Shown here one piece after another: positions 2,669-58,346 of a DNA stretch of 64,000 nt. The DNA is taken from NCBI GenBank assembly GCA_030390025.1, contig CM059427.1:186496001-186560000 (forward strand). Direction: 5' to 3'. This DNA comes from Squalus acanthias (lineage: Eukaryota). Numbering within the stretch: the first letter of the stretch is position 1; every line of letters starts with the position of its first letter. The notes below the pieces were generated by a model. It ran no database searches and was not told the DNA's origin. It saw only the letters and a list, made by a program, of their open reading frames with translations. The position numbers and the translations under genes were made by a program.

Positions 2669-3010
2669 ATTCATATGAGAAGAGTTACACACTTTATCGA
2701 TCAGGCACAGATCACAGTGAACTCGACCTGATTTGCTATAATGTTTATGCTCCTTTGAACACTGCTGCATGGACCTGGAGGTCACGTCATCTTCAAAATC
2801 AGGAGGAAGAAATAGCATCTGTTTCAAAATCTCAGCTCATCAATGTAAACAGGACCTACTTTGGGAGTCGACTGGTGCCCACAGAGACAAAGTTTAATGG
2901 CAAGAACTTCAGTGTGAGGATTGTCCCTGTGCTGTTTGAAGATGCAGGAGTTTACACATGTTCTCTGGAATCATATAAAAGGGTGACCATTAAACTAATC
3001 ACAGTTAAAG
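2669..3010 (+). CDS. Paralog A exon: V-type Ig domain (D3)
   Basis: Acceptor tatcgcag|AT, donor G|gtagg, 342 nt, phase 1-1. Encodes LDLICY..AAWTW..NFSVRI..EDAGVYTC, with canonical B-strand Cys, C-strand Trp and DxGxYxC. Confidence 0.93.
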
Positions 3011-6000
3011 GTAGGAGACAGAATGTTGTCGTTATTTTCAGTGATCAAGTCATTGTTTAAAATCTAAATGATTTTCTTGTTTACACAGTCACAGCTGAAC
3101 CATCTGATGCAGTGACTGAGGGAGACACCGTTACCCTGACCTGCTCTGTCTCTGATGTCACTGGATCAATGAGACTAGCTTGGATCAGTACTGATGGCAA
3201 AACTGTTGGAGAAAAAACATTGAATGGATTGAATGGGGAAGAGAAATCATTGAGACTGATTATTCCGAAAGCTGACAGAGGCAGAGGGAAATGGAAATGT
3301 GCTTTGTTTCATCAAAACAGTCCCCGGGTTTTAGTCCCGTACTATCTGGAGCCCAGTGGTAAGTGACACAGGGTTTGCTCTTTATACTTATAAACTTGAT
3401 AGAAAATTCTTATCACTTATTGTTCTTGTTGCCCGAAGTAGCCCCTCATTTAATTGTAGTGTAATTAGTAGCATTGATTTGATTTAATTTAATTTAAATT
3501 AATTAAAGTGTAAGTCATGGCAGCACAGCTCGGCCCCGTGGTATGCTCCTCCTGCACTATGTGGGAAATCAGGGACACTTCCTGTGTCCCTGACGACCAG
3601 GTGTCTGGGAAGTGTATCCAGCTGCAGCTACTGGCAGATCGCATTGTGGCGCTGGAGCTGCGAATGGATACATACTGGAGCATTCGCGATGCTGAGGACC
3701 GTCATGGATAGCACGTTTAATCAGTTGGTCACACCACAGGTAAAGGCTGCACAGGCAGGAAGGGAATGGGTGACCGCCAGGAAGAGTAGTAGGCACAGGC
3801 AGGTAGTTCAGGGGGTCCCCTGTGGCCATCCCCCTCTCAAACAGATATACCGCTTTGGATATTGTTGAGGGAGATGGCTTATCGGGGGAAGGCAGCAGCA
3901 GCCAACTTCCTGGCACCATGGGTGGTTCTGCTGCACAGGATGGGAGGAAAAAGAGCGGGAGAGCTATAATGATAGGGGATTCTATTGTAAGGGGAATAGA
4001 TAGGCGTTTCTGCGGCCGCAAACGAGACTCCAGGATGGTATGTTGCCTCACTGGTGCAAGGGTCAAGGATGTCTCGGAGCGGCTGCAGGGCATTCTGGAG
4101 AGAGAGGGTGAACAGCCAGTTGTCGTGGTGCATATAGGTACCAACGATATAGGTAAAAAACGGGATGAGGTCCAAAAAGCTGAATATAGGGAGTTAGGAG
4201 GTAAATTAAAAAATAGGACCTCAAAGGTAGTAATCTCTGACGTGCTAGTCAGAGTAGAAATAGAAGGATATTTCAGATAAATACGTGGCTAGAGAATGGT
4301 GCAAGGGGGAGGGATTCAAATTCCTGGGACATTGGAACCGGTTCTGGGGGAGGTGGGACCAGTACAAACTGGACGGTTTGCACCTGGGCAGGACCGGAAC
4401 TGATGTCCAAGGGGGAGTGTTTGCTAGTGCTGTTGGGGAGGGTTTAAACTAAAATGGCAGGGGGTTGGTAACCTGTGCAGGGAAACAGAGGAAAAGGGAA
4501 ACAAGGATAGAAGCAAAAGACAGGAAGGAGAAAAGCAAAAGTGGAAGGCAGAGAAATCAAGGGTGTAAATCAAACATGGCCACAGTAAACAATAATCCAA
4601 ACTTCAGGCTCAGAGAAACTCATCTTCTCTGCCTGTCTCAGCTGATCCTGGAAACATTGGAGCCTCATCACTCTCATTCTAACTGAGGGCTCGTGCATTG
4701 TGAGCGCAAGAGCAGGAAACTCGAGGCTCTGGGTGGCCTCCTGAAACAGGCTTTAGGCGTCTTGTACATGCAATTCTGGGTCCTTATGCCAACTGGAGGA
4801 CCCCGATTGAAATTGGTGTACAGATGGGCGGAGCTTATGCTGGGCCAGCTCCAGCTCACTGTACCAGGTTTTGAGTGGATGAACCACTGGTGTTTAACAG
4901 GACCGTTGGAGGCCGCTCAAGAAATGGCCAGAAAACCTTTTAACAGTTACATTTCTGTGGAGCCAGGCGGAGATGGAGTCCTTCTCCTGGCTCCACAATA
5001 ATACTGCGGCCTGGGTTCGACCTCCACACAAGCTCACAGGTTTGGCTCCCCAAAGGACCTACCTGTGGGCTGGTTCAGCATCGAAGCTGGCTGGAATTCA
5101 TCAGGCCCCCACTGGGACACAACAATTGGCGTCTGCGTATCGTCTGTTTCATTCTAATGAGGGCTGATGGTGAATTTCATCTGGCCCCAGGCCGGCAGAG
5201 ACCGGCGCTCAAAACAATCACTTCACCAACTTGATGCCCATTTTGGGCGCAAGTTCAATTTCTCAGACTTGGAACCTGCAGATTTAAAAGCAGAGGAATG
5301 AAAGGGGACCTTAAAGAGCTTTATAAGATAATGAATGGAACAGAAAATATTGGTCTGGAGGAAAATCTCTGGACTGGTATAAGAGGCAGTTGGAGACTGT
5401 GATGATGAGACTGTGAGATTACATCGAAGGATTAGCTGGAGGAACCGACTATCTTCTCTCATCCCTTGTCTTTATTTATCCTCATAATAATAAGGTTGAG
5501 TCCACGAGGGTGCTGCCAGAAAATGAAAAGCGAAGGTGTAGTGTTAGGAGATTTAAATCAGTCAGAAAATATTAAAAGGAGGAAAAAGCATCAGTGGTAC
5601 ATGGCTGAAATAAAGAACAGAGGGAAAAGAAACAAAAAGAAGCATCAGCTATACTAGCTTAAAAAACTCACAGGATTGAAGGAAGCAAAAACCAGTTAGA
5701 CCGTTAAACTCACTGTGAATGCAGCTCTATCACCAACGTTATTTGGGCCGGATTCTCACACAGGTCTTGTGATTCACTGAGCAGTGGGAATTCCTACAGA
5801 GTATCCGTGATCGGCCCCAGACAGCAATTCACCAGCTCAACAGCACCTGTCCACGCACTGAGTGTTAATAATAGGCTCAGCAATATTACAAGGCAAGGTT
5901 TCACACCGAGCAGCACAGTGCGTGGATCCTGCGTTAGCTCCCACACTAGAAACCCCGCCAGAGGAACTTGGGGTCGATGTGAACTATCGGGTGTCTGACC

Positions 6001-9000
6001 GGCGGAGCGGGAGGGCGATGGACGGCCGCCCGATGGTGCTGACGGCAGGCCCAGTCCATGTTGACGGACGGGCCTCATTAGCATCACGCCGGCAGGCCTT
6101 GGGCAGAAATCGATGGGCCGACCGCCTGACTCCACCCGGCCAGCGCTAGGCCCGGGAGAAGATTGCCGCGGCAACAGTGACTGCAGGAATGGGGGGAAGG
6201 GGGACTGAGCCATTCCTGGCCATTTTCCGGGACATTATTATCCTGATTCCACCAGCCGGGAGGCCTCAAAATTCAACCACTCACTCCCTGAACAGTGGGA
6301 TTATTGGTAATTGAATACAATAGTACATTGAGGCTTGCAAACCAGATATTCGAGAAGACAATTACATTGATATGGAGAGTAAACTAAAGACAAATGATTA
6401 GGGGATAGCATGGTAGATCACATTCAATGTTCTGTTTAATAGTTTAAAATTAGGTTTGATAATCTTGACCATGATCAATGCCATGGGAGATGACCCAGTC
6501 CATCATAATTATACTGGAAGTCTGTCTACTGATGAAATTGTCCATTTAGCCTCATCTAGTGTTAAAATATTATATTAATTAAGAATTTGAAATAAAATAT
6601 TAAATTAAATGTACCATAGATAAACATTACAACAGCACACAATACTTTCAAAAACATGCATGGTAGCACTGTTAAACATTAAGGGGGAGAAATTCAGTAT
6701 CGCCCCATTTGGGGCACAATTATCAGCCGGGCGCAAAGATTAGCGCCTGGCACTAATTATCGCCTCCTACTGCAAACTTCACTTTTATCGCCCCTGGAGG
6801 TGATTGGAGCGCTAAATCAGGCGCTTCACACCTGTCTTAAGGTGCAAAGGCCAAGGAGCGAGGCGCTACCTCAGAGCGCTGGCGAAGCTCATGTGATGTC
6901 AGTCAGCAATGGAACACACACACAATGGCGCCAGCCAGTTCTGAAAGGGGAGGGTTGATCTTGCTTTCCATCCACATCCTGCTCATTGCAGCCTTGAATC
7001 TCGGCCTGGAGAGACCTGTACATCAAATCTGTTGGAAAGAACAATGGAGAGTAACAGGGAAAGAGCTCAGAGTGCAGCCCCAACAGTCTCTTCTAAATCG
7101 ATACAAGGAAGGGCAAATCAAAATGAACCTGCAAAGTGCTGCTCAGTACCCAAAACTCCTTCACACAGCGTTGAATCTCTCCAGAAGTCTCTCTCTCTCT
7201 TTCTCAGAATGCGTGGTTCAAAAATGTCACCAACAATAAAAGGCAGGAAGCGGTCACCTTTAAACAGCACTCCCCCAGTCCCTTCCTGACTGCAAAACGC
7301 TCCCCTCAACCTGTTGTTGCTAGCGGAAGGTGGTAAGGCAGGGGGCGCCACTCAATATCCGCTCCGGGGCGCTACCGGGGCGTTGCGCACTCGACTGACG
7401 TCACGATCTGCCGGCGCAGGAGATCGTGGCGGAAGTGTTTAGCGCCGCCGCAAAATGTCTAGTTAATTTCGCGAGCGGCGCAAACATCACCGCGCCCGGG
7501 CGCTAGTTGCTTTGCACCCCATTAGCGTCCTCTTAAGGCGCTAATGGGAGGCGCAACCAACTGAATTTTTCCCCCTAATAGTTTCAACAAAATTGCACTT
7601 TGTCAAAATAGGTGTTTTTTAAGTGAATGCCAGTTGCAGATCTGTGGCTGTCTCACACCTTGATGGTTAATGTCTCTCCAGACAGCACAGCCGAGATTGG
7701 GAAATCGCCACCTGGGGAATCTCAGGTGTGAATCTGTATTCTGCCACTCTGGTCAGGACAACACTTTCACATCCAGTTTATGCCAGTTTAGAAAATGAAT
7801 GACCCAATTTTGAGTTTATTCACTCCCTTTTCATTCCCTCAGAGCTGCTCACTTTAATTCTAAACCATTGCACCCACAAGAATCTGTTGAAAATAGTCAA
7901 ATCCAGACATGTAAAATGTGACAAAAAGAACACAACGTGGACTTGGTCTTGATGGAAATATTTGGTTCTCTGGCTCCCAGTGTTTAAAGCAGAATGTTGT
8001 CACTTTCCACATCTTTTATAGAATGACTGGCAGGAGTATTTAAATATTAAACGAGATGGAGAGTGAAACTAAAATCTCAACTTTGTCCTTCACAGTGAGA
8101 CCACTTCCGGAGATTTGGATCATCACAGTTTTGGGCTACTTGTTGGTTAAACTGGGCGTTGCTGTTGGACTAATTTGCTGCTTGAAGAGGATGACCAGAG
8201 TAAGAATTTCTTTAAGCTTTCCAGTAAATCAGGAATAAGTGCCGAGCTGTCACTTGGCTCTGAGAAAACTGATGTTTGTTGAACAGATATTATGTGGTCA
8301 CAAACTGTATTTTAAAATTTCATTTAAATATTGTACATTGTACTGAATTTAAAGGAATCATCAGTTAAAGAAAGCAATTGTTCCAAATTTGCTGAAATCT
8401 TAGAGCTTTGAATATTTTTCCTGATTCAAACAGCAATAACTTCCCTGCTCCCACTTTCCATCAGGCTCTGAGGAAGGAATCAGGGCGATCTCGGAGGGCC
8501 ATACCTGATTATCAATGAATGGACAATGCTCAAACTAGGAGCCCAATCTTTTAATATTTTTCATTGATTATCACAAATATTCCTCTTGGAAATTAGTAAC
8601 TTGAAAGTTGTCAGAAACCAATATTTGAACAGTTAAAGCACAAACAGTAAAAATTACAATAAAAGGAAATTACTAATGTATTTGGTGACAATTAATGAGG
8701 GCGATCATTTTAATGTGTGCTGTTATTCTTGTTGCTGTGACCTGGTGGCGCTAGAGAGCTGCAGTAGTGTTGGGGCCTAGAAATTAATTTGTCGCTCTAT
8801 AAACCACTTCCTCTGTGGCAGGTTTGGTTCACCTGATTTACTAAAAGGCAAATCTCAGTCGATTCAACAGCCAAGTTTCTGTTTCGGAGAGCCCTGTCGT
8901 GTTTATGTTCGAGGAAGGAGTGTTTCAAGGCTGTGTGCTTCTGGGTGAAGCGAGGCGTTGTAGAATGGGAACTATTGGGGTGAGAGGCACAGAAATGTGG

Positions 9001-10173
9001 TAACTAGTGGAAAGTTTGAACTTACATGAAGGATGTGAGGTAATCTGTATTGTTCAGGATGTTTACAGAGAATTACATAGAATTTACAGCACAGAAACAG
9101 ACATTCGGCCCAGCAGGACGGTGTCGGTGTTTATGCTCCACACGAGCCTCCTCCCACCCTACTTCATCTCACCCTATCGACATATCCTTCTATTCCTTTC
9201 TCCCTCATGTACTTATCCAGCTTCCCCTTAAATGAATCTGTGCTATTCGCCTAAAACACTGCATATGGTTGTGAGTTCCAGCGAGGAAGGAATAGGGAAA
9301 TCTCTGAGGGCCAAACCTGATTATCAATGAATGAAATAAAAACAGAACATTAATGAACATTGCTCACACTAGGAGCCCAATATTCTAGTTTTAAAATTTT
9401 TCATTTAATTTACTATTGCAAATATTCCTCTTGGAAATTGGAAGTTAGTAACTTGATTTTCGTCAGAAACCAATATTATTTGAACAGATGTTTGAAAAAG
9501 CACAACCAGTAAAAATACAATAAACTGAACAGTACGACCTGTATTTAGTGAAAATTAATGATTATGTTAAACTTTACATCAGATCACAGCTCAGGGAGGT
9601 AATAAAAGAGACAGAATCAGTAGCTTTAGTAGGAGAGCATTGTTCTGTCAGAAGCAGAGTTGTCAGTTCAAGGAGGTAACTTTACTGGTGAGGTCAGTCA
9701 ACCACAGGGAGAACCTCTTCGAAATGTGGTCACACTATGGCCATGAACTTCGAGCTCAATGGTGTGACCTTATTTTACATTCATACATTCATTGTAGGAA
9801 ATATCTTCCGCAATATCTTCTATCAGTAACTGGACTTAGTTAATCATTTTAATCAGGTCTGTTCCTTCCAATTACTGAAGTCTTTAATTGTTGAAATTAT
9901 CTCATTAACACTGAGCCAGTGATGTGTGGGTCATGGTCTGTTCTGTTGCCCATTCTGTAAAATTACTCCTCTATTCGACTTCCTCTTTATCCATCACTTC
10001 CAGTCCAGTGTTTATTATTGAAGGATAAGCTCTTTATTTAAAGCACATTTCTTGCCTCTTGTCAGATATCGAACAGCGGGAATCCACACGATGTGACAGG
10101 AAATGAAACAGATGATTCACAAGAAGCCGTCGCATTACAGACCCTGAACTCTGATACTGATCTGAGATCATAG
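2669..10173 (+). CDS. Paralog A (3' part): CD4/LAG-3-like four-Ig-domain type I membrane receptor; exons D3, D4, TM, cytoplasmic tail (leader, D1, D2 lie upstream of the window)
   Basis: Phase-compatible GT-AG exons 2669-3010, 3089-3358 and 8096-8199, then 8465-8518 or 10066-10173. The spliced product is V-set Ig + C2-set Ig + hydrophobic TM + short tail. Intron sequence at 1-2660 is homologous to the D2-D3 intron of paralog B. Confidence 0.85.
3089..3358 (+). CDS. Paralog A exon: C2-type Ig domain (D4) with WxC motif
   Basis: Acceptor ttacacag|TC, donor G|gtaagt, 270 nt, 78-bp intron from D3. Encodes VTAEPSDAVTEGDTVTLTC..LAW..GKWKC. Confidence 0.93.
3517..4596 (+). mobile_element. CR1 LINE ORF1 fragment (Cys-motif/leucine zipper + SGNH esterase), 3' truncated
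   Basis: CSSCTMWE, IPLSNRYTAL, IGDSIVRG and VVHIGTND motifs, with frameshifts. Confidence 0.9.
5745..6280. mobile_element. GC-rich MITE-like element
   Basis: Starts gggccggattct and ends aaaattcaacc, resembling the Harbinger-type TIRs elsewhere in the window. Confidence 0.45.
6683..7575. mobile_element. PIF/Harbinger (Tourist-like) MITE, family 1
   Basis: TIRs gggggagaaattcagt / actgaatttttccccc, TSD TAA (6680-6682, 7576-7578). Related copies at 44603-45403 and 52394-52944. Confidence 0.9.
8096..8199 (+). CDS. Paralog A transmembrane exon (intramembrane Lys, juxtamembrane CC)
   Basis: Acceptor ccttcacag|TG in phase 1, matching the D4 donor; donor AGA|gtaaga in phase 0. Encodes VRPLPEIWIITVLGYLLVKLGVAVGLICCLKRMTR. 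Confidence 0.85.
8465..8518 (+). CDS. Candidate proximal terminal cytoplasmic exon of paralog A (ALRKESGRSRRAIPDYQ*)
   Basis: Polypyrimidine acceptor cccactttccatcag|GCT in phase 0, stop TGA at 8516-8518, AATAAA near 8659. Confidence 0.4.
   Translation, partial: ALRKESGRSRRAIPDYQ
8470..9560 (+). repeat. Dispersed direct duplication of ~230-280 bp (8470-8698 and 9283-9560)
   Basis: gaggaaggaat..gagggcca.acctgattatcaatgaatg..ctaggagcccaat..aaatattcctcttggaaatt..gtcagaaaccaatatt..aattaatga is present twice. Confidence 0.85.
9070..9280 (-). mobile_element. CR1-type LINE 3' fragment
   Basis: Reverse complement of a CR1 tail (acagcacagaaacagacattcggccc..acttatccagcttccccttaaatg). Confidence 0.7.
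10066..10173 (+). CDS. Candidate distal terminal cytoplasmic exon of paralog A (ISNSGNPHDVTGNETDDSQEAVALQTLNSDTDLRS*)
   Basis: Acceptor tttcttgcctcttgtcag|ATA in phase 0, 35 open codons of acidic/polar tail, AATAAA near 10846. Confidence 0.55.
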   Translation: MSNSGNPHDVTGNETDDSQEAVALQTLNSDTDLRS

Positions 10174-34355: not shown

Positions 34356-34443
34356 ATGAGGCTACGATTTTTCTGCAGCAAAATGCCAGCTGGTTTGATG
34401 TTCAGTTTCTTTGTGTTTCTACTTCCGTCTGTTTTCACACAAA
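34356..34443 (+). CDS. Paralog B signal peptide exon (MRLRFFCSKMPAGLMFSFFVFLLPSVFTQ)
   Basis: ATG at 34356 (second ATG 34383), hydrophobic core, donor A|gtaagt in phase 1 compatible with D1. An upstream acceptor tttcttacag at 34333 suggests a separate 5'UTR exon. Confidence 0.75.
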
Positions 34444-34477
34444 GTAAGTGCCTTATTTCCACCAATCACATTCATAT

Positions 34478-36822
34478 GGGCCCGGATTCTGCGGTGGGTA
34501 TGACCTCATACTCTGAGAGTACGCCGTCATACCGCCTTTGAAATATTCCCCAAGTTCGGGATTTTCACTTGCGCATGTGCTGAATCCCGATCTTGCGATC
34601 TGTCAAGGTGCGCCGTGACGGATGATCCGCACCGCCTTGGAAATCACAATTGCCGGCACAGAGTTGGGCTCGTTGCCCATCAATTGCCCAGCAATTACCT
34701 CCGGAAATTTTACGGACGCAGGAGCCTGTTTCTATGGACGTGTTTTGATGGAGGAAACTATTTTTGTCGGTCGATTAAGGTTCAAATGGCCGTGCCTTTC
34801 AATTTGAAGCATATGTAGTGTGAGACGGTGCAGTCCAGACACCCAATCTTCAAGACCAGCAAACATGGCAAACTACAATCAAAAGAGGAACATTTTTCCA
34901 GCTTGACCTTTAATACAAAGTGAAACAGATGTACACAAGCACACAAGGAAATATTTGTGGCATTGTGTTACAAAGAACATAGTTATCACAGGGAGCACCC
35001 ATGTTCAAATAGCCTGGATAAAAACATTTCCTGTAGTCAAAACAGACTTCTCACAGCGCAGTGCGTGCCCTCAGGATGTTTGACTTTGCTCAGACTTTTA
35101 AGCAGAAATCAATGCAAGATTTCTAGGATAACTTTTAGTTTTGTTTCAACAATGGGCCAGAAATTCGGGTCTCCACGGGTGAGTACGCGCTGGGTACTCA
35201 CCCGTAGACCCAACGAAAGTGCCGGTTTCGCGCATGCACTGTGCATGCGCTGGAAACCGGAACTTCCGTTACCCTGAAGGAAGGGGGTTCAGAGGTCGAA
35301 TGCGTGCGCCGGAGAGGCAGCGCGTAGACCTCGAACTTCTTTTTTTTTCAGGTTTCTCCATGAGGGTAACTACGGAGAAGCTGCGCGGGGAAAAAGGAGG
35401 CGCAAGTCCTGCCTTTAACAAGGTAAGTGGTGAATTAAGTGCAATTTAAACATTTTTTCAACAGATTTATCTTTTTTACATACTTTAAAGAAAGGTAAGT
35501 TTATTTTTAACACCGTTAAAAAGTGTAATTAATTTTTTCAAAAATTTAAATTTTTGTTTAATGTAGTTAAGTTATGTAATTTATAGTTATTTTTAAAATG
35601 TGATTTAAAAAAAAAAAATATTTGAAGTTTTAGTTAGGTTTTGGGGCCGATCTCTTCATAGATTTGACAGGTCTTCCTGTCAAATCTATGAATGAAGATT
35701 CCCTGCTCCGATTGGCTCTCCATGGCCCATGTGATCCCAGGGGACGCTTCGAACTAACTGCGCCCCTGGGATACGCAAGCACTGCGCGCCGGCAGCTGCA
35801 GGAGGCCCAGGAGCCGAAGTCCACGCGGGCCTGAAGCACAACGGCAGGCGCGGCAGGTAAGGACACGGCGATCCTTGCACCCTGCGGGAAGCCGGCGAGC
35901 CGAATTGCTGGCCCAATGTGTAGCGAGCGGCTGTTATCTTTCGTGTACTTTAGCTTTATATCATTAAACGGAGGGCACACGTCCAAATCGTACAATCGAA
36001 CAGTAGTTAAAGATTTCTTTAGTTATTTTTGCAAGTTTCATGTGAACACATTATTTAGCATACTCTATTCTACATGCAGTTACATTCTGAAAATTAAATT
36101 GATTGCTCATGAAAAAATATCCTTTAGAAACACAGAAGGCCAGACAGATAGGCAGATAGAAAGTATTCACTTTAATTACTTGGGAAGTTGATAAGAAAGT
36201 TAAATAAAGTGAACATCTATCAGATTTAAGCGACCAATTCTGTCCTTTCAACTCAAAAACGAACAACGTAACAAACACTATATCGATATAATGCATCTAC
36301 AATATGAAAAATAGATTTATCTATTACCAGTCTAAATGAGGACTGAATAATATATTTTAATCCTGAAAGTTAACATTGAATATATGGCTGGGAATCTCTT
36401 TCTGAAGTTCAACAACGTTACTTGTCGGAGTGTTAGACCTTTACTGAGTATCAAAACAGAAAGTTGTAAACATCGGGACTAATAAATTGTGATATATGAA
36501 ATAAGTTCAAGTACCAGTTTAATTAAAAGTTTTAGAAGTTTTTAGAAGCTTTTAAACAGTTTTTAAAATGTAATTTAAATGGAAGAGACTGCGAGACGTT
36601 TCTGTGGGCGTGGCTTAGTTTTGGCAGGTTTTGTGGGCGTGTCTTCCCTTACGCATAGGCTGTACGCTGCGCGCTGCCTCCCTGATGTCATACGCTGCGC
36701 AGAGCTCTGCAGCACAGAAGAGCAAGTCTCCGTTCTGGGCCTCGCACAAGGTAAGTTTGTTTATCTTTTCATAGGTCGGCGGCGTACTCCGTAGCTAGAC
36801 CGCCGACCACAATTTTTCGGCC
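34478..36822. mobile_element. Probable non-autonomous Harbinger-type element in intron 1 of paralog B, with nested MITE
   Basis: Degenerate TIRs gggcccggattct / aatttttcggcc and inverted subterminal gagtacgccg / cggcgtactc. Confidence 0.55.
35154..35914. mobile_element. Harbinger-type MITE, family 2
   Basis: TIRs gggccagaaattcgg / ccgaattgctggccc, TSD AAT; internal hairpin tagatttgacag..ctgtcaaatcta. Confidence 0.92.
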
Positions 36823-37573
36823 ATTCTTTCAATTTATCATAGTGTTTAATGAATTCACACACCTAGTATTCAGAAAGCAAGTAAAGTCTTTATTTTCATG
36901 TCCCTGCTCCTTTAAACAGGATGTGTAAGTTCCCTTTTCAGATTCCAGCAATGGAACAACATAATGACCCGGATTTTCCGGGGTCTATGACGGCGTACGT
37001 GGTGCGTGCACGGTCGGAAGTGCCCCGCAGGTTCTCGGTTTCTACATGAGCTGCACATGCACGAAAACCAAGTGCTGGTTTATCTCTGTCACGTGTCTCT
37101 TCAGACAAGGTGGGTGGAGGGGCGGACGCAGGAACCGCCTGATCTCCGCCCACCTTGGGAAACCCTGTCACAGGACAAACAGGGTGGAGACTCGACATAA
37201 CCGTATCCTGCCCCAATTTCTCTCCCTGAGCTCCTGCCCACCCTGATAATGCCCCCTGTAGACCAGGAGTCAGGAGGAGATTTGGAGCTTTTATTTTCTG
37301 TAACATGGAATTAACCATGTGCACTCTTTTTACTTTGGTTATTTTTTGTAGTAATGATGTATGTTCTGATAACTCTAGTAATAGATACACTGAATGTATA
37401 ATGGATTTGTTCTGTTTTTCTCTGTAATAGTGTCTGCAGTGAAGGCAACATGATCAGTTGATTATAAAAATATGACGATAAATAAATGAACTCCAATATA
37501 AATAATTACAAATATGGGATTAAGGAGTTGTGATTTGATATTAAAATACTTACATTGTTCCTCTTTCTAACAG

Positions 37574-37914
37574 GAAACACAAATCATATGTATTTTTTGG
37601 ATGAGGGAGATGACATTCCATTAAAAGGACCGGACAATCCTGGGAATGGCCCTGTTGTCTGGGAATGGAAACCACACTCAGGGCAAGAAATCCAGCGACT
37701 GGTTACTTTTCACAAAGGGAGTTCGAGTCGGTGGACGCACAATGGAACAATCACATTGGAAACAAGGAGTTGTACAAAAAGGCATTGCAGGATGGTGGTT
37801 CCATTAATCTGAGAATTAGAAAACCCACATTTAAACTTGCGGGATCGTTCATCTTGACTCAAACACAGCCAAGTAATAAAAGGCTGAAACAGTACGAAAT
37901 ATTTGGGATCAAAG
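37574..37914 (+). pseudogene. Paralog B exon D1: cysteine-free V-like Ig domain with 1-nt deletion near 37735
   Basis: Acceptor ttctaacag|GA, donor G|gtgagt. The N-half (..IPLKGP..VVWEWKP..RLVTFHK..RW) and the C-half (AQW..SINLRIRKPTFKLAGSFIL..YEIFGIK) are in different frames (ORFs 37555 and 37665). Confidence 0.8.
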
Positions 37915-38163
37915 GTGAGTGCAACAAAGTCTAGAAAAGGTTCATTAATATGAATCTCCAAAAATAATTTTACTTGTACAGATGAGAGATTGCCAGGATC
38001 ACGTGAGATTTATATCACCCAGTGCAGAGAGCATCTCTCATTAAAACAACCTGGGGAAAGATTCTGCTCATTGTTTCTCCTGAAATGGTCAACATGAGTA
38101 AAAACATTTCGACAATTTCACCAGAAATATCAAACCGAGAAATCTACCACATGAGATATTATG

Positions 38164-40346
38164 ATCCAGGAGCTAATAAACTGCAAGCGCAAGGCATTCC
38201 TGATCTGGAAACAGCAACACAACTCGAGAGCAAGAAAGCAGCTCTACAGACGCCTGAAGGCCGAGGTCCGACAAAAAACTCGCGACCTAAAGAACAGATG
38301 GTGGCTGGAGAAAGTGCAGGAGATCCAGCAGCTAGCCGACAACCACGACATGCGTGGATTCTTTAGCACAGTTAGACCGCCTACGGCCCAAGCACCCAAG
38401 GTCCTATCCCACTGCGGGCCAAGAACGGAGAGGGAGGCAGTCAGTGCCCGCTGGAAGGAGCACTTCGAAGATCTCTTAACCGAGACTCTGTCTTCGATGC
38501 GAGTGTCCTCAACTCCATCCCGCAGCATGCTACCCATCACCATCTCAGCACAACCCCAGCCCGGCATGAGGTTGAAAAGGCCATCCAACAACTGAAGATC
38601 AACAAGGCCTCAGGAGCAGATGGAATCCCTGCCGAGGTGCTAAAGCATGGCGGAGAAGCACTACTGGCGCGAATTCATGAACTCATTTCTCTTATCTGGA
38701 AGGAGGAGAGCATGCCAGGGGATCTCAGAGACGCCGTAATTGTGACCATCTTCAAGAAAGGTGACAAGTCCGATTGCGGTAATTACAGAGGAGTTTCCCT
38801 GCTGTCTGCCACAGGGAAAGTCATCGCAAGAATCCTCCTCAATCGCCTTCTCCCAGTGGCTGAAGAGCTCCTCCCAGAGTCGCAATACGGATTCCGCCAC
38901 TAAGGGGCACAATGGACATGATCTTCACTGCGCATCAATTACAAGAGAAATGCAGGGAACAGCACCAACCGCTGTACATGGCCTTCTTTGCCCTCACAAA
39001 GGCCTTTGACACTGTCAACTGTGAGGGATTATGGAGTGTCCTCCTCAAATTCGGCTTGCCCTCAAAAGTTTGTCACCAACCTCCGCCTGCTTCACGACGA
39101 CATGCAAGTCGTGATACTGACCAACGGTTCCACCACAGACCCAATTCATGTACGGACCAGGGTCAAGCAAGGCTGTGTCATTGCACAAACGCTCTTCTCG
39201 ATCTTCCTTGCAGCAATGCTCTATCTCACGCTCAGTAAGCTCCCCACTGGGGTGGAGCTAATTTACAGAACAAACAGGAAACTGTTCAAACTCTGTTGCC
39301 TCCAGTCCAGATCAAGGTCGTCCCTTCCTCTGTCGTCAAATTACAGTATGCAGACGACGCTTGCGTCTGCGCACACTCGGAGGTCGAACTCCAAACCATC
39401 GTTTACACCTTCACCGAAGCGTACGAGAGCATGGGCCTTACACTAAACATCCGTCAGACAAAGGTCCTCTACCAACCTGCCCCCGCCACACAGTACTGCT
39501 CCCCGATTATCAAAATCCATGACAAGGCCTTGGACAACGTGGACCACTTTCCATACCTCTGGAGCCTACTGTCAACAAGGGCAGACGTCGATGACGAAGT
39601 CCAACACCGCCTTCAGTGTGCCAGTGCAGCCTTCGGTCGCCTGAGGAAGAGAGTGTTTGAAGACCAGGACCTCAAACCCGGCACCAAGCTCATGGACTAC
39701 AGAGCAGTAGTAATACCCGCCCTCCTGTATGCCTCAGAGACATGGACCATGTAAAGCAGGCACCTCAAAGCACTGGAGAGGTACCACCAATGCTGCCTCC
39801 GCAAGATCCTGCAAATCCATTGGCAGGAGAGGCGCACCAACGTCAGTGTTCTCGCTCAGGCGAACATCCCCAGCATCGAAGCTTTGACCACGCTCGATCA
39901 GCTCCAATGGACGGGTCACATCGTCTGCATGCCCGATACGAGACTCCCAAAACAAGCGCTCTACTCGGAGCTCTGACACGGCAAGAGAGCCCCAGGTGGG
40001 CAGAGGAAACGCTTCACGGACACCCTCAAAGCCTCCTTGAAAAAGTGCAACATCCCCACCGACACCTGGGAATCCCTGGCACAAGACTGTACAAAGTGGA
40101 AGAAAAGCATCCGGGAAGGCGCTGAATACCTCGAGTCTCTTCGCCGGGAGCAAGCGGAAGCCAAGCGCAAACAGCAGAAGGAGCGCACGTCAACCCAAGC
40201 ACCCCACCCACCCACCCCTTCAACCACCGTCTGCCCCACCTGTGACAGAGACTGTAGGTCCCACATTGGACTCATCAGTTACCTGAGAACTCATTTTTAA
40301 CGTGGAAACAAGTCATGTTTGGTTCCGGGGGACTGCCTGAGAAGAA
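38164..40346 (+). mobile_element. RTE-clade LINE, 5'-truncated
   Basis: ARWKEHFEDLL, LPESQYGFR, VKQGCVIA, LQYADD, LLYASETWT and C-terminal CPTCDRDCRSHIGLISYLRTH; several frameshifts; possible TSD attatg. Confidence 0.93.
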
Positions 40347-41700
40347 TTATGGTCTGTACCCTGGCTCACTTTCTGTAAGATGTACTAATTCTGTTACCAA
40401 ACCAATAGATCACTTGTAGTAATAAGCCTCAGCGCGATGGGACAGGAATAAGATTGGCCAGTATCACTGCTCCTGATTGCTATCCAGTGAACCTGTTCGA
40501 TGTGTCACTTGGTTGAGGTCCCAGAGGAAGTCAAGCATCCCTGGAACTTGTACTCTGCCAAAAAGTTAATGCCTTCAGGAAAAATCGCATGGCAGAGAAA
40601 AATCAATAGATTGTGTCAATTCAATAATATTAAAATTTTTTAGTATAAATAAATCAAAATCTTTAGTTTCTGCCAACTAAGGATGTTGCTAAACAGCTGT
40701 ACTTCCTGGTTGGTTGATGTGATTAACATCTAAATGAGGCTGAGGTCACTGTCAAATGAACTTGGTACAAAATATAATTCAATCCTGAAATGTCGTAGTG
40801 GCCAAAATATGACCCTGACTGTACTGGGCCTGGACCATTGCTCCTGAGGTGTTGGCGCAAACTGCACCAGAATGTGTTGACCATAACAGAAAGTCAACTC
40901 ATTTACATTTGTTAGTGGCACTCATGGTACATAGTGCCTGGTACACGGGGAATGTCACACGGGTCGGGCACCAGAGTGTTGGGTGCCAGCAGCTAATGGA
41001 TGGCACCATTATTTTGGCCTGACATTGGAATTAAAGTCCCTGTTGAAGATTTGATTCTTACTTGTCATGCTGTAGGTGGGACTGAAAGTCAGGGTGGGCA
41101 TTTTTAGAAGAAGCCTCTCCTGAAGTGCCGTTCCTGATGGACGCTCAATGATTGGAGCCCTGCTCAGGAGCATTTTGGGAGTTCACTAATTTCAATAACT
41201 TCTGGGGCTGTAATGACTTTTGATGTGGATTTTGTGCACAGGCTCCCAGTGCGTGTGTTGACTGGTTTTACTGAAGTGTGCGAGGCACATTGAGAACAGA
41301 GTGGGACTGGAGCCTTCTCCATGTCTGATAATATGGGCGCTAATTTCCATCACACCCTCCTCTGGTGAGTTTCCATCACCTGTCCATTGTGGTGTCGACT
41401 TTCCCAAATGTCATCCAAACCATGTAACCTTAACCTGACCCCGGATACTCCAGCAGGGTCAGGGGTAAAGGTCATCGGCCGCACTCTGGCTCACTTACGC
41501 TGGCAGAGCTGGACCGAGAATTTTCAGGCTCACTGTGTTATTCTACTGCTAAAATGCACTTGTGTGTAATCTGGCCTGACTCTTTAATGCAGCAAGGTAC
41601 AAGTGCTGATGATGGGCACATCTTACGGTCAGTTAGAACCTAATCGTTGGATTGTACATGCCACTACTTACACGAAATCTTATTGATTTGTTTTTCACAG

Positions 41701-41970
41701 TTGAGTCAAGTCCACAGAGGCCTTTGCTGGGCAGTGAAGTTACACTCAGCTGTACCATCTCCAAACTCTCAGATACAGTCAGTCTTCAATGGAAACAGAG
41801 AGACTCATCTCAGCCGAACAGGAGCAACACTGATCAGATCCGACTAAATAACACAGTCTATCTGATAGTCAAACATGTTGCAGTAGAGGATAAGGAGTTG
41901 TACGCGTGTGAAGTGCAGGAACATGGATCCATTTTTCTCACAGGAAAAGCTGATTTTTCTATGAACCAAT
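41701..41970 (+). CDS. Paralog B exon D2: C2-type Ig domain
   Basis: Acceptor tttttcacag|TT, donor T|gtaagt, 270 nt. Encodes VESSPQRPLLGSEVTLSC..LQW..VYLIV..EDKELYAC, with sequons NRS and NNT. Confidence 0.92.
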
Positions 41971-43035
41971 GTAAGTGCAGTTACCTCACAGTAGATATTA
42001 AAGAGTTACTAATATAAAACTGTTACACACAAAGGACAGGGAGCACAGAGACAGCATATGCTTTTACTAGAGACTGGGACCTTATTTTCTTTTTGAGACA
42101 TTGGTGTAAATATAACATTGCAATACAGTGGGCAAATATCAACAACCAGGTCTAGATGGATCTGACAATAAATAGCAAAAGAGTTGAAGGTGGAGAGCAA
42201 CATTCTCACACAGCTCATCAGTTACCAAAACACAGAGACAATTCTTTTCTAAATATGGTTCCCTTTACTCACTGCAAGGGCACAGCATTAAAGGCCAGGC
42301 CTAAATATTTACTCAGTGCTCGTCCAATACACACACCTCAGGTACAACACTGACTGACTTTAGTTGAACATCATCGGTAGTACAAGAATTGTACAAGCAG
42401 TTATGGTGCTCTGCGATTGTTAACATCTGAGATCAATAGATTGGGAGTGGAGGGAGGGCGGATAGTTTTAATGTGGCCTGGTTCTGTACAGGTAACTGAA
42501 TGGGGAACCACTTCACCAGCTGTTGAGAGGCAAGTGTGGCAGAGGAACAAGGCTACAGCCAATATTTGTTTTTCTTGTCTAGAATTGTCAAAGTAAATGA
42601 CGCTGTTTAACATCAGAAGGTAGAAAATCTGAATTGCTGCATGTTTTTTTCATAAGTGGACCCGAAGTATAAAACAAAAACAGCAAATGCTTTCAGTAAC
42701 ATAGCATCTTGAAGAAAGAAAAACATACGCTTCACTGAGGAAGAATGAAGTGGACATCAATCATCAGTGAGAACGTTAAGAGAGGAGACTGAAAGCTTGG
42801 TCAAAGAGATATGTTTTCAGTATGTGTGAAGACACAGCCAGAGGTGGAGGGGTTTAGGGAGAGAGTTCCAGAGGTTCGGGCTGAGGGAACAGAAGGTTTT
42901 GACACCAATAGAGGGAGGAGTCAGCGAGAGGACTACAGGGAACGTAAAAGGAGGTAATTCTGCAGGAGGTTGCAGAGGTAAAATGGGTTGAGGCTGTGGA
43001 GTGATTTGTAGATGACAATGAGGATTTTATATTCG

Positions 43036-43442
43036 GTGGCATAGTGGTTAGCACTGGTGCCTCACAGCGCCAGGGACCCGGGTTCGAATCTGACCTCGGG
43101 TGACTGTCTGTGTGGAGTTTGCACATTCTCTGCGTGGGTTTCCTCCGGGTGCTCCGGTTTCCTCCCACAGTCCAAAAATGTGCGGGTTAGGTTGATTTGG
43201 CTATGATAAATTGACCCTTAGTGTTAGGGGGGGATTAAATATGTGGGGTTATGGGGATAGGATGGGATATGTTAGGGGGAATTAAATACGTGGGGTTATG
43301 GGGGTAGGGTGGGATATGTGTACTGTGGGGATTAAAGCAGGGACAGTGTACTGGACTTGGATGATCAGCCATGATCGTATTGAATGGTGGAGCAGGCTCG
43401 ACGGGCCGAATGGCCTACTCCTGCTCCTAGATTCTATGTTTC
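43036..43442 (+). mobile_element. tRNA-derived V-SINE (HE1-like) with CR1-type tail
   Basis: A box tggcatagtgg, B box ggttcgaatc, V-domain ctgtgtggagtttgcacattctc..gggtttcctccgggtgctccggtttcctcccaca, TSD tatattcg. Confidence 0.92.
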
Positions 43443-43847
43443 TATATTCGATGTGTTGAGGGACAGGGAGCTAGTATGTGCCAGTGAGGATGGGCGAGGA
43501 GGTTTTAGTGTGGGAGAGAATGCAGACAGGTAATTTTGATTTTGTGCGATAGTAATTCATCTTTGTGAGATATAAAACGTGTTGCCAATTCGATGTCACC
43601 TGCTTTACACTATCGCACAAAGGCTAATTACCCCCATGTTTCTGTGAGAAAGCATCAGGATTGCTCCCTGGACAATAAGGAAAGGATTTCCAATGTTCCA
43701 ATCTTGTCAACTGCCAAGTTGTATTGCAACAGCAATTAAAATGACTGTTGGATAGTCTTGGTGAGAAAATTTGAAGGCTTTAGTAGAAATAGAGAAAAAG
43801 AAAGTAAGAAAGAAAGTGAGAAAGAAAGAAAGCAAGAAAGAATGTGC

Positions 43848-45610
43848 TGTTGAGATTAGCCTATTTGTTAATATTAACTTATCTCAAGTCTTTCAAATAA
43901 TCAGGATCGACTGCTAACCAATATGGCGGGAATATTGTGTTTTGTCAGGGTTTAAGATGGAATATAACACACTAGTAACACAGCAAAAACATACGACCGT
44001 AAGATACAGCTAGTACCGGTCCCGATCGGACGGACGGCTGGCGTGCGCCAACAGTTCTCCGGCTTGTGGCCTTCCTCTCTCTCGTCTAGAACCTCCAAGA
44101 ATGGGTTGAGTTCGCTCCCTGAAGAGTGTTAGACCAGTCTCACTCTTGTATAGCTCTCCCCTCCACCGTCTGTGCTAAGAACTTTTAGGGTCTTGCTATT
44201 ATTCCCTTTTCAGGGGTGGGCCTGATGTACAATATGGACAGGACTATTTGACCTGTAAGGTTTCTTCCTAAACCAATGGCACGGCGAGTTCTTTCTCTCA
44301 ACTCTCAGAGGAAAACCCTCCCCAAGTTTGGAGTCAGACATGCCATTCTTGGCCTTCAGATGTTCGTAGCTGCTTGTTATCAGTTATTTATGTTCAAGCT
44401 GTTCATGTAACTTTAGCTGTGCAAAACTATGTCATTCCATTATCAAACTATTGTACCATGGAATGAATCATTAAATTCCCAAAGGTATCCTCTATTCTGT
44501 TCTCACACACTGGTTAACTTATGCATTTTAAAGTAGTTTTGTTAAACCAAGTCAAAATTCTAACTTACAAACAGCAGATAGCTAGCTTGGTAAGAAGATT
44601 ATTGCGGAAAAATTCGGTTGATTCGCGCCTCCCGTTAGTGCCCTAAGAGGGCGCTAACGGGGCGCAAACCAACTAGCGCCCGAGCGCGGCGAGGTTTGCG
44701 CTGCTCGCAAGATTGACCAGACATTTTGCGGTGGCGTTAAACACTACCGCCACGATCTCCTGCCCCCGCAGATCGTGACGACAGTCGAGCGTGCAACGCC
44801 CCGGTAGCGCCCCGGATCGGATATTGAGTCGCGCCCCCTGCCTTAGCACCTGCCGCTAGGAACGACAAGTAATGGGGAACGTTTTCAAGTCGGGAAGGGG
44901 CTGGGGGTGCGCTATTTAAAGCCGGGCGCTTCCTGCATTTTTTGTTGGCAAAATTTTGGGGTTTAACGCTGCCCTAATGAGGTTTGGCCCTCAGCACCAC
45001 TTTTGAGGTTCCTAAGCACCGAGCTCTTTCCCTGCGCCTATCCTTTAGTGCTTCCACACAATCAGTTTTGAGGCCTCTCCAGGTCGAGATTCAAGGCTGC
45101 AATGAGCAGGGTGTGGCTGGCCAGCAAGATGGCCCCTCCCCTTTAAGAACTGGATGGCACCAGTCTGTCTGGCTTCCATGGTAATTGGCATCGCCTGAGC
45201 TTCGGTAATGTTCTGAGGTAGCGCCTCACTTCCTGACGTTTGCGCCTTAAGAGAGGTGTGTAGCGCCTGATTTAGCGCTCAAATCACCTTCGGGGCGATA
45301 GAGGCAAATTTTGCAGTCGGAGGCGATAATTAGCACCAGGCGCTAAACTTTGCGCCCGGCCAGTATTAGCGCCCCAAAATGGGCGATACCGAATTTCTCC
45401 CACTATATATATCCGTCACAGTGTCGATGCTATAACATCCGCAGAGAACCAAAACACAAGCGGATTCTAAGCATCTATCTAGTTATTCTAATACTATTCT
45501 GATGAGACTTTTTGTCTCCAGTTCTAATACAGTCATGTAAACACAGTCTTATTCGCGTCACAGTTTCATTCTCATAACCCCATATAACTTGGATACCCTA
45601 TTTTCTAACA
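43848..45610. mobile_element. Probable solo LTR (~0.96 kb) with nested MITE
   Basis: TGTTGAGA...TCTAACA termini, flanks gtgc/gtac, absent from the paralogous site in A (~880). Confidence 0.7.
44603..45403. mobile_element. Harbinger MITE, family 1 (inverted relative to 6683-7575)
   Basis: Degenerate TIRs ggaaaaattcgg / ccgaatttctcc, TSD TAT. Confidence 0.88.
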
Positions 45611-46139
45611 GTACAGAAAATGCACAGGTATAAAGCCTGTGCAGAATGGTCAATGCAGATGTGGACAGATGTTCACTGTGAAAAAACCTACAAGTTGCCA
45701 CCAACTCAAACAACAGCGACCTTGCTTTAAGGATTATGTTAAAGTGGGCCAGGCCCATGGAGCAGACTTGTACCCATTTTACATGGGGGAGGTGAGCTCT
45801 GAGGCAGAATTTTGCACAAACTCGTTACAGTTCAGCAGAGGACCTTCTTTGAATAATTATTCCATGTAAATGAGGATTGAACTTGCCTGAAGGAACCATA
45901 TTTGTTCCGTTGCAAAATTCTAAGCAACCTGCAGCCGCCACCAGCAGGACTCCATGTTGCTGGCCCAGCCTCAGAATATTGGGCCTGTGATGTCATGGTG
46001 TCATCCATGGCACAAAAACCTCATCATATTAAAAATCAAAAAGGTTTCATTTTTCTAAATTTCTGTTGTCTTTTGGGAATTGAATTCAAACAATTTGTAC
46101 AATTTTGAAAAAATTCATAGTTTTGACAAAACCTTTTTT

Positions 46140-47015: not shown

Positions 47016-47148
47016 TTGATCAAATGAAGTAATGAAGATCAAAATGCAAGTATTTTTATATAATTGTGGTCAGTAATTAGTCTGGCTTTTCTCTGCAGCT
47101 CAGCAATTGTAAAATTCTAACACGTTGTTCTCTGTCTCTCTATTGCAG

Positions 47149-47487
47149 ATTTATATCAAGAGAGTTACACGCTTTATCGATCAGGCACAGATCACAATGA
47201 ACTCGACCTGATTTGCTATTATGCTTCTTCTTTCAACACTGCTGCATGGACCTGGAGGTCACGTCATCTTCAAAATCAGGAGAAAGCAATAGCATCTGCT
47301 TCGATATCTCAGCTCATCAATGTAGACAGGACCTACTTTGGGAGTCGACTGGTGCCCACAGTGGCAAAGTTTAATGGCAAGAACTTCAGTGTGAGGATTG
47401 TCCCTGTGCTGTTTGAAGATGCAGGAGTTTACACATGTTCTCTGGAATCATATAAATTTGTGACCATTAAACTAATCACAGTTAAAG
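47149..47487 (+). CDS. Paralog B exon D3: V-type Ig domain
   Basis: Acceptor tattgcag|AT, donor G|gtagg, 339 nt open; paralogous to 2669-3010. Confidence 0.93.
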
Positions 47488-47565
47488 GTAGGAGACAGAA
47501 TGCTGCCGTTGTTTTCAGTGATCAAGTTATTGTTTAAAATCTAAATGATTTTCTTGTTTACACAG

Positions 47566-58345: not shown

Positions 58346-58346
58346 A

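What the first reader, a model, noticed from the sequence alone, without database searches (positions are those of the whole stretch)
8096..8199. Lysine in the middle of the transmembrane helix (GYLLVKL) followed by CC
Seen: IWIITVLGYLLVKLGVAVGLICCLKR, and neither candidate tail has an ITIM, ITAM or CxC. Known: a TM Lys/Arg with a short motif-free tail is the hallmark of receptors that pair with acidic TM residues of DAP12, DAP10, FcR-gamma or CD3. Tyr followed by Lys is loosely reminiscent of TCR TM segments, and juxtamembrane Cys are palmitoylated in CD4. Inference: paralog A is an adaptor-coupled activating receptor, and inhibitory ITIM partners may exist elsewhere in the cluster.
Basis: partly seen in the sequence, partly recalled or inferred. 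Interest (0 to 1): 0.82.

Follow-up and report, generated by a model that had tools for sequence, protein, structure and literature searches.

The report
Shark activating-receptor exon with membrane lysine
This short exon encodes the membrane-spanning helix, with a buried lysine, of a shark immune receptor gene from a large undescribed family that comes in "activating-type" and "inhibitory-type" versions, much like the paired receptors of mammalian natural killer cells.

Summary
Window 8096-8199 (+) is a clean exon with an AG acceptor and a GT donor. It reads RPLPEIWIITVLGYLLVKLGVAVGLICCLKRMTR. Its phase fits the upstream D4 Ig exon. Spliced contigs in two RNA-like public runs join 3358 to 8096 exactly.

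The gene belongs to a family of "uncharacterized" four-Ig-domain proteins in sharks, rays and basal ray-finned fishes. Of 78 chondrichthyan members, 22 from 14 species carry this helix with the Lys, and none of the 22 has an ITIM. Thirty-two have a neutral helix, and 27 of those have ITIM tails. Lys-type and ITIM-type genes interleave on a D4 tree, which is the classic paired-receptor pattern.

The ectodomain of a homolog matches CD4 and LAG-3 best among solved structures.

Two side remarks hold less well. The CC pair is not conserved. The tail has no Tyr but is not motif-free, because it carries a conserved acidic motif.

Coupling to a DAP12/FcRgamma/CD3zeta-like adaptor remains an inference and could not be tested here. 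I found no description of the family in the searched literature.

The parts
2669..3010 (+). D3 exon of gene A (V-like Ig domain, ...DAGVYTC), phase 1 at both ends
   Evidence: Sequence and splice sites. Pfam V-set E 3.1e-5, just under the curated cut-off. tblastn with family proteins. D3-D4 joint 3010|3089 in runs X2 and X4.
3089..3358 (+). D4 exon of gene A (C2-like Ig domain with a KWKC 'WxC' motif). It ends with the first base (G) of a split codon.
   Evidence: Pfam ig E 3.6e-6, above the cut-off. Joints.
3359..8095 (+). Intron of 4737 bases between D4 and the TM exon. It is largely transposon-derived: reverse-transcriptase-like open frames and very high copy depth in the DNA-like run X21.
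   Evidence: Open frames. Repeat matches elsewhere in the window. Depth table and GT..AG joint.
8096..8199 (+). TM exon (the finding). The split codon G+TG reads Val, followed by RPLPEIWIITVLGYLLVKLGVAVGLICCLKRMTR. Phase 1 in, phase 0 out.
8149..8151 (+). AAA codon of the mid-membrane lysine
   Evidence: Invariant in 23 of 23 unique homologous helices, window included.
8176..8181 (+). TGC TGC, the juxtamembrane Cys-Cys pair, which is not conserved in the family
   Evidence: Cys at +9 in 10 of 23 and at +10 in 9 of 23 unique helices.
10066..10173 (+). Cytoplasmic tail exon (phase 0) with stop: ISNSGNPHDVTGNETDDSQEAVALQTLNSDTDLRS*. Assigned by homology only; no transcript evidence.
   Evidence: AG at 10064-10065. 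tblastn of the P0006 C-terminus, E 9.6e-13. Same tail in P0091, P0092, P0094, P0097 and P0098.
34356..47835 (+). Paralog B: leader about 34356-34490, D1 about 37546-37925, D2 about 41646-41969, D3 47149-47487, D4 47566-47835. No TM or tail exon of either type was found in the remaining 16 kb.
   Evidence: A/B DNA homology ends about 95 bases after D4.

Best explanation
Window 8096-8199 is the transmembrane exon of gene A, an activating-type member of a multigene family of type I receptors. The family has four Ig domains arranged V-C2-V-C2, as in CD4 and LAG-3, and is found in sharks, rays and basal ray-finned fishes. It has two versions. One has a neutral helix and a long tail with two ITIMs, the inhibitory design. 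The other has this helix, with an invariant Lys in the membrane core, and a short Tyr-free tail. Shown here: the exon, its splicing to D4, the conservation of the Lys, the mutually exclusive tail types and the CD4-like fold. Inferred: the buried Lys pairs with an acidic TM residue of a dimeric ITAM adaptor of the DAP12/FcRgamma/CD3zeta kind. That pairing would be needed for stable surface expression and would convert ligand binding into Syk/ZAP70-type activation, opposed by the ITIM paralogs.
For: - Exon, frame and splice sites.
- Exact D4-TM joint 3358|8096 (GT..AG) in one contig each of runs X2 and X4. Exon depth was 33-169 against 0-24 in the flanking intron bins.
- Family: 69 HMMER hits, 29 below 1e-10; 78 chondrichthyan proteins.
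- 22 of 78 carry the helix, in 14 species (6 sharks, 8 batoids). 0 of 22 have an ITIM. 32 of 78 have a neutral TM, and 27 of those have at least one ITIM.
- With the Lys position left free in the search pattern, 26 of 26 matches have Lys.
- The conservation moment of the helix, with the Lys column excluded, points 3.5 degrees from the Lys. 30 of 10,000 shuffles were as strong and as well aimed.
- Lys-type and ITIM-type genes interleave on a D4 tree: 17 changes against a shuffle mean of 15.5, with strongly supported (starred) Lys/ITIM sister pairs P0006/P0085 and P0109/P0134.
- P0006 (Lys type) and P0085 (ITIM type) are 97% identical over the ectodomain.
- AlphaFold puts the Lys inside a single helix, residues 443-474 of P0006.
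Against: - No adaptor was identified. I could not search a shark genome or protein set for DAP12, FcRgamma or CD3zeta, and two literature searches gave nothing for cartilaginous fish.
- The transcript contigs are only 90-99% like the window. They carry T>C at 8132 (Leu to Ser), so they may come from another individual, species or paralog. Each joint rests on one short contig per run, with 29 letters on the shorter side.
- The last ~40 bases of D4 are identical in A and B, so the D4 side of the joint is not gene-specific.
- The tail carries a conserved acidic motif of unknown role, so it may signal on its own.
- The helical-face test used sequences collected with a pattern that fixes some positions, and the sequences are related to each other.
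- The 5' half of gene A lies outside the window, so its intactness is not shown.
Confidence: 0.7

Rival explanations
1. The Lys is conserved for another intramembrane partnership. Examples are homo- or hetero-oligomerisation with a non-ITAM partner, or retention and quality control. Under this reading the conserved acidic tail (TGNETDD...EAVALQTLNSDTDLR) is the real signalling or sorting element.
For: The tail motif is conserved between sharks (Pristiophorus, Heptranchias, Scyliorhinus) and a skate (Amblyraja P0143). No adaptor was identified.
Against: Stingray and manta Lys-type members keep the helix but have an unrelated basic tail (RRGRARGHRRR...), so the helix is conserved independently of the tail. 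The strict exclusion between Lys and ITIM is the signature of adaptor-coupled paired receptors.
Confidence: 0.15
2. Gene A is a shark CD4 or LAG-3 orthologue, meaning a co-receptor that uses palmitoylated juxtamembrane Cys and a kinase-binding or inhibitory tail.
For: The best structural matches of the homolog's ectodomain are CD4 and LAG-3. D4 has a WxC motif. The profile hits LAG-3 at 3e-12.
Against: No Cx(C/H) or (F/Y)xxL(D/E) is present in either candidate tail. These motifs define shark CD4 and LAG-3 according to PMC10768021, section 3.2. The family is multigene with ITIM and Lys forms. D2 has YxC, not WxC. The CC pair is not conserved.
Confidence: 0.03
3. The exon is a chance open frame or a relic of a dead gene and is not used.
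For: Gene A's 5' part is outside the window. The D4-TM intron is full of transposon sequence.
Against: The splice sites and phases are exact. Spliced contigs and exon-only depth are seen in RNA-like runs. tblastn gives E 2e-16. D3, D4, TM and tail exons are all open.
Confidence: 0.02

Closest known systems
DAP12/FcRgamma-coupled activating members of paired Ig receptor families (mammalian activating KIR and LILRA; teleost NITR and LITR). Named from my own knowledge, not from a call.
   Same: Type I Ig receptor with a basic residue in the membrane core and a short tail without ITIM or ITAM. ITIM-bearing paralogs have near-identical ectodomains in the same gene cluster. Ectodomain and tail type are reshuffled over time.
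   Different: The ectodomain is a CD4-like V-C2-V-C2 rod, not KIR/LILR C2 domains or NITR V domains. The tail has its own conserved acidic motif. The adaptor is unknown.
CD4 / LAG-3 family
   Same: Four domains V-C2-V-C2, with long strands running from D1 into D2 and from D3 into D4 in the model. Foldseek's top 7 PDB hits are CD4 or LAG-3, E 1e-17 to 7e-16. VIA-align gives Z 17.7 for four-domain CD4 and Z 15.6 at rmsd 2.6 A over 170 residues for rat CD4 D3-D4. D4 has WxC.
   Different: No Cx(C/H) or (F/Y)xxL(D/E) tail. TM Lys or ITIM tails instead. Many genes per genome. D2 has YxC. Sequence similarity appears only at profile level and is no better than to CEA.
Skate/zebrafish MDIR (modular domain immune-type receptors), the paired Ig receptor family already described in a cartilaginous fish
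   Same: A multigene family of activating and inhibitory Ig receptors in a skate (passages of PMC3031540).
   Different: MDIR domains are described as CD300/TREM/pIgR-like V domains. None of the 78 family proteins, including skate ones, carries that name. I could not fetch MDIR sequences to compare directly.
TCR-CD3 transmembrane assembly
   Same: The principle only: one basic TM residue against a pair of acidic residues. This is from my own knowledge.
   Different: Here Tyr at -4 is invariant and lies on the Lys face.

Membership tests
Adaptor-coupled activating immunoreceptor (paired-receptor design) | Type I membrane protein with Ig ectodomain | tested here: met
   Pfam Ig hits on the D3 and D4 exons. 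Homolog model: leader, four Ig domains and one helix.
Adaptor-coupled activating immunoreceptor (paired-receptor design) | Lys or Arg in the core of the TM helix, conserved | tested here: met
   Lys is the 13th of about 24 hydrophobic residues. It is present in 26 of 26 homologous helices when that position is left free in the pattern.
Adaptor-coupled activating immunoreceptor (paired-receptor design) | Short cytoplasmic tail without ITIM or ITAM | tested here: met
   The spliced tail has about 40 residues and the read-through tail 17. Neither contains Tyr. 0 of 22 Lys-type relatives have an ITIM.
Adaptor-coupled activating immunoreceptor (paired-receptor design) | ITIM-bearing paralogs with closely similar ectodomains | tested here: met
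   27 of 78 family proteins have a neutral TM plus ITIMs. P0006 and P0085 are 97% identical over the ectodomain. The two types interleave on the tree. None was found inside this window.
Adaptor-coupled activating immunoreceptor (paired-receptor design) | Lys-dependent association with an acidic-TM ITAM adaptor | not testable with these tools
   This needs co-expression and co-immunoprecipitation. No shark adaptor sequence could be obtained, and literature searches gave nothing.
CD4/LAG-3 family | V-C2-V-C2 four-domain ectodomain of CD4 type | tested here: met
   Tested on homolog P0006, not on the window's own joined product.
CD4/LAG-3 family | WxC motif in strand F of both D2 and D4 (PMC10768021, sections 3.1 and 3.6) | tested here: not met
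   D4 has KWKC in gene A and NWIC in gene B. D2 has YxC: LYACEV in gene B and LYTCEV in P0006.
CD4/LAG-3 family | Tail motif Cx(C/H) for CD4 or (F/Y)xxL(D/E) for LAG-3 (PMC10768021 abstract and section 3.2) | tested here: not met
   Neither motif is in either candidate tail.
CD4/LAG-3 family | Specific sequence similarity above other Ig families | tested here: inconclusive
   Family profile against PDB: LAG-3 3e-12 and CD4 4.5e-9, but CEA 5.6e-13. Single window exons hit only generic Ig proteins.

The most novel reading that the evidence does not exclude
The family is a third, fish-only lineage of the CD4/LAG-3 superfamily, lost in teleosts other than eels and in tetrapods. In cartilaginous fishes it expanded into a rapidly reshuffling cluster of activating (TM-Lys) and inhibitory (ITIM) receptors. 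That would make it an NK-receptor-like system built on a CD4 scaffold, possibly sensing MHC class II-like or other polymorphic ligands. The invariant Tyr/Lys helix face would date adaptor-coupled activation to before the shark-ray split.
Probability: 0.2. Interest if true: 0.8.

Novelty: new member of a known kind. Interest (0 to 1): 0.55.

Why it matters
Paired activating and inhibitory Ig receptors are central to innate lymphocyte and myeloid control in mammals, but very few are described in cartilaginous fishes, the oldest lineage with adaptive immunity. This finding points to a whole family, annotated only as "uncharacterized", that shows the full paired design. Its transmembrane lysine helix is conserved between sharks and rays, and its ectodomain resembles CD4 and LAG-3 most closely.

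The family gives a concrete handle on two questions. The first is when charge-mediated adaptor coupling arose. The second is whether the CD4/LAG-3 scaffold was once used more widely than as a T-cell co-receptor.

The mechanism itself, a buried Lys paired with an adaptor, is textbook. The surprise is moderate and lies in the family, not in the principle.

Tried and rejected
- **TM exon of paralog B.** I looked by tblastn and blastn and found none in 47835-64000. A hydrophobicity scan gave only repeat-like or unconvincing frames.
- **ITIM-type TM or tail exons in the window.** None at E up to 5.
- **Alternative splicing between Lys and ITIM ends in one gene.** The isoforms I fetched differ at the N-terminus only. 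P0006 and P0085 differ at scattered ectodomain sites, so I treat them as separate genes.
- **Atlas search with TM plus tail.** Best score 0.84, which is uninformative.
- **Word-based search with the TM plus tail region.** Only 3 Pristiophorus proteins, so there is no evidence that other families share this module.
- **Bony-fish side.** 9 proteins, all unnamed.
- **Single-exon PDB searches.** Generic Ig hits only.
- **Literature.** Searches for a description of the family or of shark adaptors found none. PMC10768021 does not mention such genes; I read its outline, section 3.2 and passages. Subscription journals and supplementary files were not seen, and Supplementary Files of PMC10768021 may hold further CD4/LAG-3-like sequences.
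- **Poly(A) signal scan.** Not decisive.
- **TM-to-tail junction 8199|10066.** It therefore rests on homology only.
Full report
**Observation.** Window 8096-8199 on the + strand is an exon-like unit. It follows ...ttcacAG and is followed by GTaaga. Read from 8098 it gives RPLPEIWIITVLGYLLVKLGVAVGLICCLKRMTR without a stop, while the other two frames are closed. The hydrophobic run lies between Glu and Lys-Arg, and the Lys (AAA, 8149-8151) is its 13th of about 24 residues, so it sits in the membrane core. The CC pair is at 8176-8181.

**Anatomy in the window.**
- Two Ig exons lie upstream on the same strand. D3 (2669-3010) is V-like and ends ...DAGVYTC. D4 (3089-3358) is C2-like with KWKC.
- D4 ends with one base (G) of a split codon, and the TM exon begins with two (TG). 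The phases fit and the junction codon reads Val.
- The 4.7 kb intron between them is mostly transposon sequence.
- The TM exon ends in phase 0.
- tblastn with the C-terminus of database protein P0006 found a phase-0 tail exon at 10066-10173, preceded by AG. It reads ISNSGNPHDVTGNETDDSQEAVALQTLNSDTDLRS followed by a stop.
- Reading through the donor instead gives VRISLSFPVNQE and a stop.
- Neither tail has Tyr, CxC or CxH.
- A second gene, paralog B, lies at about 34.4-47.8 kb with leader, D1, D2, D3 and D4. Its DNA homology to A ends about 95 bases after D4. No TM or tail exon of either type was found in its remaining 16 kb.
- The 5' half of gene A lies before the window.
Exons were searched singly.

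**Transcripts.** The run search returned 24 runs that hold up to a third of the sampled words of D3-D4. I laid four of them on 2660-8400 at 90% likeness or more.
- Runs X1 and X2 (organism A) and X4 (organism B) behave like RNA. Depth is 33-169 over the TM exon bin, against 0-24 in the flanking intron bins. X1 and X2 have no depth in the non-repeat intron.
- X21 behaves like DNA.
- A joint from 3357 to 8095, "cut +1", meaning 3358|8096 with GT..AG ends and 4737 bases skipped, is present in one contig each of X2 (depth 17) and X4 (depth 230). It is absent from X1 and X21.
- The D3-D4 joint 3010|3089 is also present in X2 and X4.

Caveats on the transcript evidence:
- The contigs are short, with 29 letters on the shorter side of the joint.
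- They are 90-99% like the window and carry T>C at 8132 (Leu to Ser, as in several homologs).
- The 3' end of D4 is identical in A and B.
- The joint therefore shows that a D4 exon of this type is spliced to this TM exon, or to a near-identical one. The source could be a relative or a paralog.
- One X4 contig leaves D4 at 3359 for sequence that is not in the window. This suggests that another D4-like exon is spliced elsewhere.

**Family and conservation of the Lys.**
- HMMER with the D3 exon against 1.84 billion representatives gave 69 hits, 29 of them below 1e-10.
- All ten whose names I looked up are "uncharacterized" or "hypothetical" proteins of sharks, rays, sturgeons, bichirs and eels.
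- A word-based search with the full-length homolog P0006 gave 78 chondrichthyan proteins.
- Of these 78, 22 carry the helix ...[G/A/V/L]YL[L/F/V][V/I]KL..[A/G].GL... (19 found by script, and 3 variants confirmed).
- The 22 come from 14 species: 6 sharks and 8 batoids.
- With the Lys position left free in the pattern, 26 of 26 matching proteins among all 148 fetched have Lys.
- In 23 unique helices, window included, Tyr -4, Leu -3, Lys 0, Leu +1 and Gly +6 are invariant. Part of that invariance is imposed by the pattern; the Lys is not.
- The conservation moment of the helix, with the Lys column left out, points 3.5 degrees from the Lys. In 30 of 10,000 shuffles it was as strong and as well aimed. 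The strength alone was matched in 1,575 of 10,000. This is soft support for a conserved protein-contact face centred on the Lys. The sequences are related, and some positions were fixed by the collecting pattern.

**Paired design.**
- Of the 78 proteins, 32 have a neutral helix of a different, mutually similar sequence (...VVIFGSLALLLIIIL...).
- Of those 32, 27 have at least one [SIVL]xYxx[IVL] match, typically IHYGSI plus VIYAQI. Five have short or truncated tails.
- Three more models end in the same VIYA... tail without a helix.
- 21 models stop inside the ectodomain.
- None of the 22 Lys-type proteins has an ITIM. Their tails after the helix hold no Tyr, apart from one Tyr each in P0114 and P0148.
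- P0006 (Lys type) and P0085 (ITIM type) of one species are 97% identical over the ectodomain and diverge right after D4.
- On a D4 tree of 22 Lys-type, 24 ITIM-type and the two window rows, the tail type needs 17 changes, against a shuffle mean of about 15.5, so it is not clustered at all. Starred branches force at least 3 changes, and two starred sister pairs are Lys/ITIM. Three ITIM rows without a D4 hit were dropped. The tree has only 90 columns and used the quick method.
- Consecutive locus numbers on the same large records suggest that the two types are neighbours. Examples are Hypanus LOC132405176 to 181, Mobula hypostoma LOC134348858 to 860, and Chiloscyllium chiPu_0019109 to 111 on one 257 kb contig.
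- Sturgeon and eel members also have helices with Lys or Arg and short tails, but of unrelated sequence.

**Tail and CC.**
- The tail is not motif-free. ...TGNETDD.QEAVALQTLNSDTDLR is nearly the same in Pristiophorus, Heptranchias and Scyliorhinus. It is recognisable in the skate Amblyraja (P0143) and absent from stingray and manta members, which have a basic tail. Its role is unknown.
- The CC pair is not a family feature. Cys is at +9 in 10 of 23 unique helices and at +10 in 9 of 23. Palmitoylation is possible here but is not what is conserved.

**Fold and relation to CD4/LAG-3.**
- AlphaFold2 of P0006 with a 23-sequence family alignment (mean pLDDT 81) gives a leader, four Ig domains and one helix at 443-474 that contains the Lys. 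Long strands run from D1 into D2 and from D3 into D4.
- Foldseek against the PDB ranks CD4 (five chains) and LAG-3 (two chains) as the top seven, with E from 1e-17 to 7e-16 over about 420 columns. pIgR follows at 1.4e-15.
- VIA-align on Foldseek's list gives Z 17.7, 17.7, 16.6 and 15.9 for four-domain CD4. Rat CD4 D3-D4 scores Z 15.6 at rmsd 2.6 A over 170 residues. The next unrelated rows score about 13.9, and LAG-3 D3-D4 scores Z 12.9 at 22% identity.
- The family profile hits LAG-3 at 3e-12 and CD4 at 4.5e-9 in PDB sequences, but CEA at 5.6e-13. The window's single exons hit only generic Ig proteins.
- D4 has the WxC motif that PMC10768021 calls very unusual and typical of D2 and D4 of CD4/LAG-3. 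D2 here has YxC.
- The tails lack the Cx(C/H) and (F/Y)xxL(D/E) motifs by which that paper identifies shark CD4 and LAG-3.
- The family therefore works on a CD4-like scaffold but is not CD4 or LAG-3. A deeper common origin is possible and unproven.

**Mechanism.** The shown steps are a real, spliced TM exon, a Lys in the membrane core conserved across sharks and rays, strict exclusion between Lys and ITIM, and recurrent reshuffling of ectodomain and tail type. Established knowledge of paired immunoreceptors, recalled rather than taken from a call, then suggests the following. A buried Lys with a short Tyr-free tail marks receptors that assemble through that Lys with an Asp pair of a disulfide-linked ITAM adaptor dimer (DAP12, FcRgamma or CD3zeta). 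A mid-helix Lys is the geometry seen with DAP12. I put about 0.7 on adaptor coupling. Which adaptor is involved cannot be said. Rival readings and their refuting results are listed in the Rival explanations section of this report.

**Novelty.** The principle is well known. The family appears undescribed in the open literature I could search. Those searches cover neither subscription journals nor supplements. The only described paired Ig family of a cartilaginous fish that I met in the literature, MDIR, is reported as CD300/pIgR-like (passages of PMC3031540). Other first-stage notes of this scan report further Lys-helix exons 39 kb upstream and 1.6 Mb downstream in this genome. I did not test them.

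**Limits.** No adaptor was identified. The tail junction has no transcript support. The transcript contigs may come from relatives or paralogs.

Noticed in passing
window 10066-10173 and homologs P0091, P0092, P0094, P0097, P0098, P0143: The short tail of Lys-type members carries a conserved acidic motif (TGNETDD...EAVALQTLNSDTDLR). It is shared by sharks and a skate and replaced by a basic Arg-rich tail in stingrays and mantas. Its function is unknown.
   Followed up: partly
window 47835-64000: Paralog B has leader and D1-D4 exons but no recognisable TM or tail exon in the 16 kb that follow. Homology to gene A stops about 95 bases after D4.
   Followed up: partly
window 3359 (run X4 loose end): One transcript-like contig leaves a D4-like exon at its donor and continues into 93 letters that are not in the window. 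This suggests a paralog spliced to a different next exon.
   Followed up: partly
window 8096: The DNA-like run X21 (organism H) has a 6-base insertion just inside the TM exon's 5' end. It adds two codons, matching the longer VRVR/VRAR linker of several homologs.
   Followed up: no
window 3500-4600 and 6680-7580: Transposon pieces sit inside the D4-TM intron. They have reverse-transcriptase-like open frames, copies elsewhere in the window on both strands, and depth in the millions in run X21. They are also covered in the RNA-like runs.
   Followed up: no
proteins P0152, P0153, P0155 (sturgeons) and P0022, P0004 (eel): Bony-fish members of the family also have helices with a mid-membrane Lys (sturgeon) or Arg plus Lys (eel) and short tails, but with helix sequences unrelated to the shark one. 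This is either independent acquisition or deep divergence.
   Followed up: partly
proteins P0001 (1710 aa), P0004 (2139 aa), P0003, P0082-P0090: Many database models string two to five four-domain units together. These are probably run-on gene models across tandem genes, though real multi-unit receptors are not excluded.
   Followed up: no
window 31732 and 49377: Short tandem repeats translate as Leu/Val/Cys-rich hydrophobic runs (LLVCLVMLVC...) and mimic TM segments in a hydrophobicity scan.
   Followed up: no
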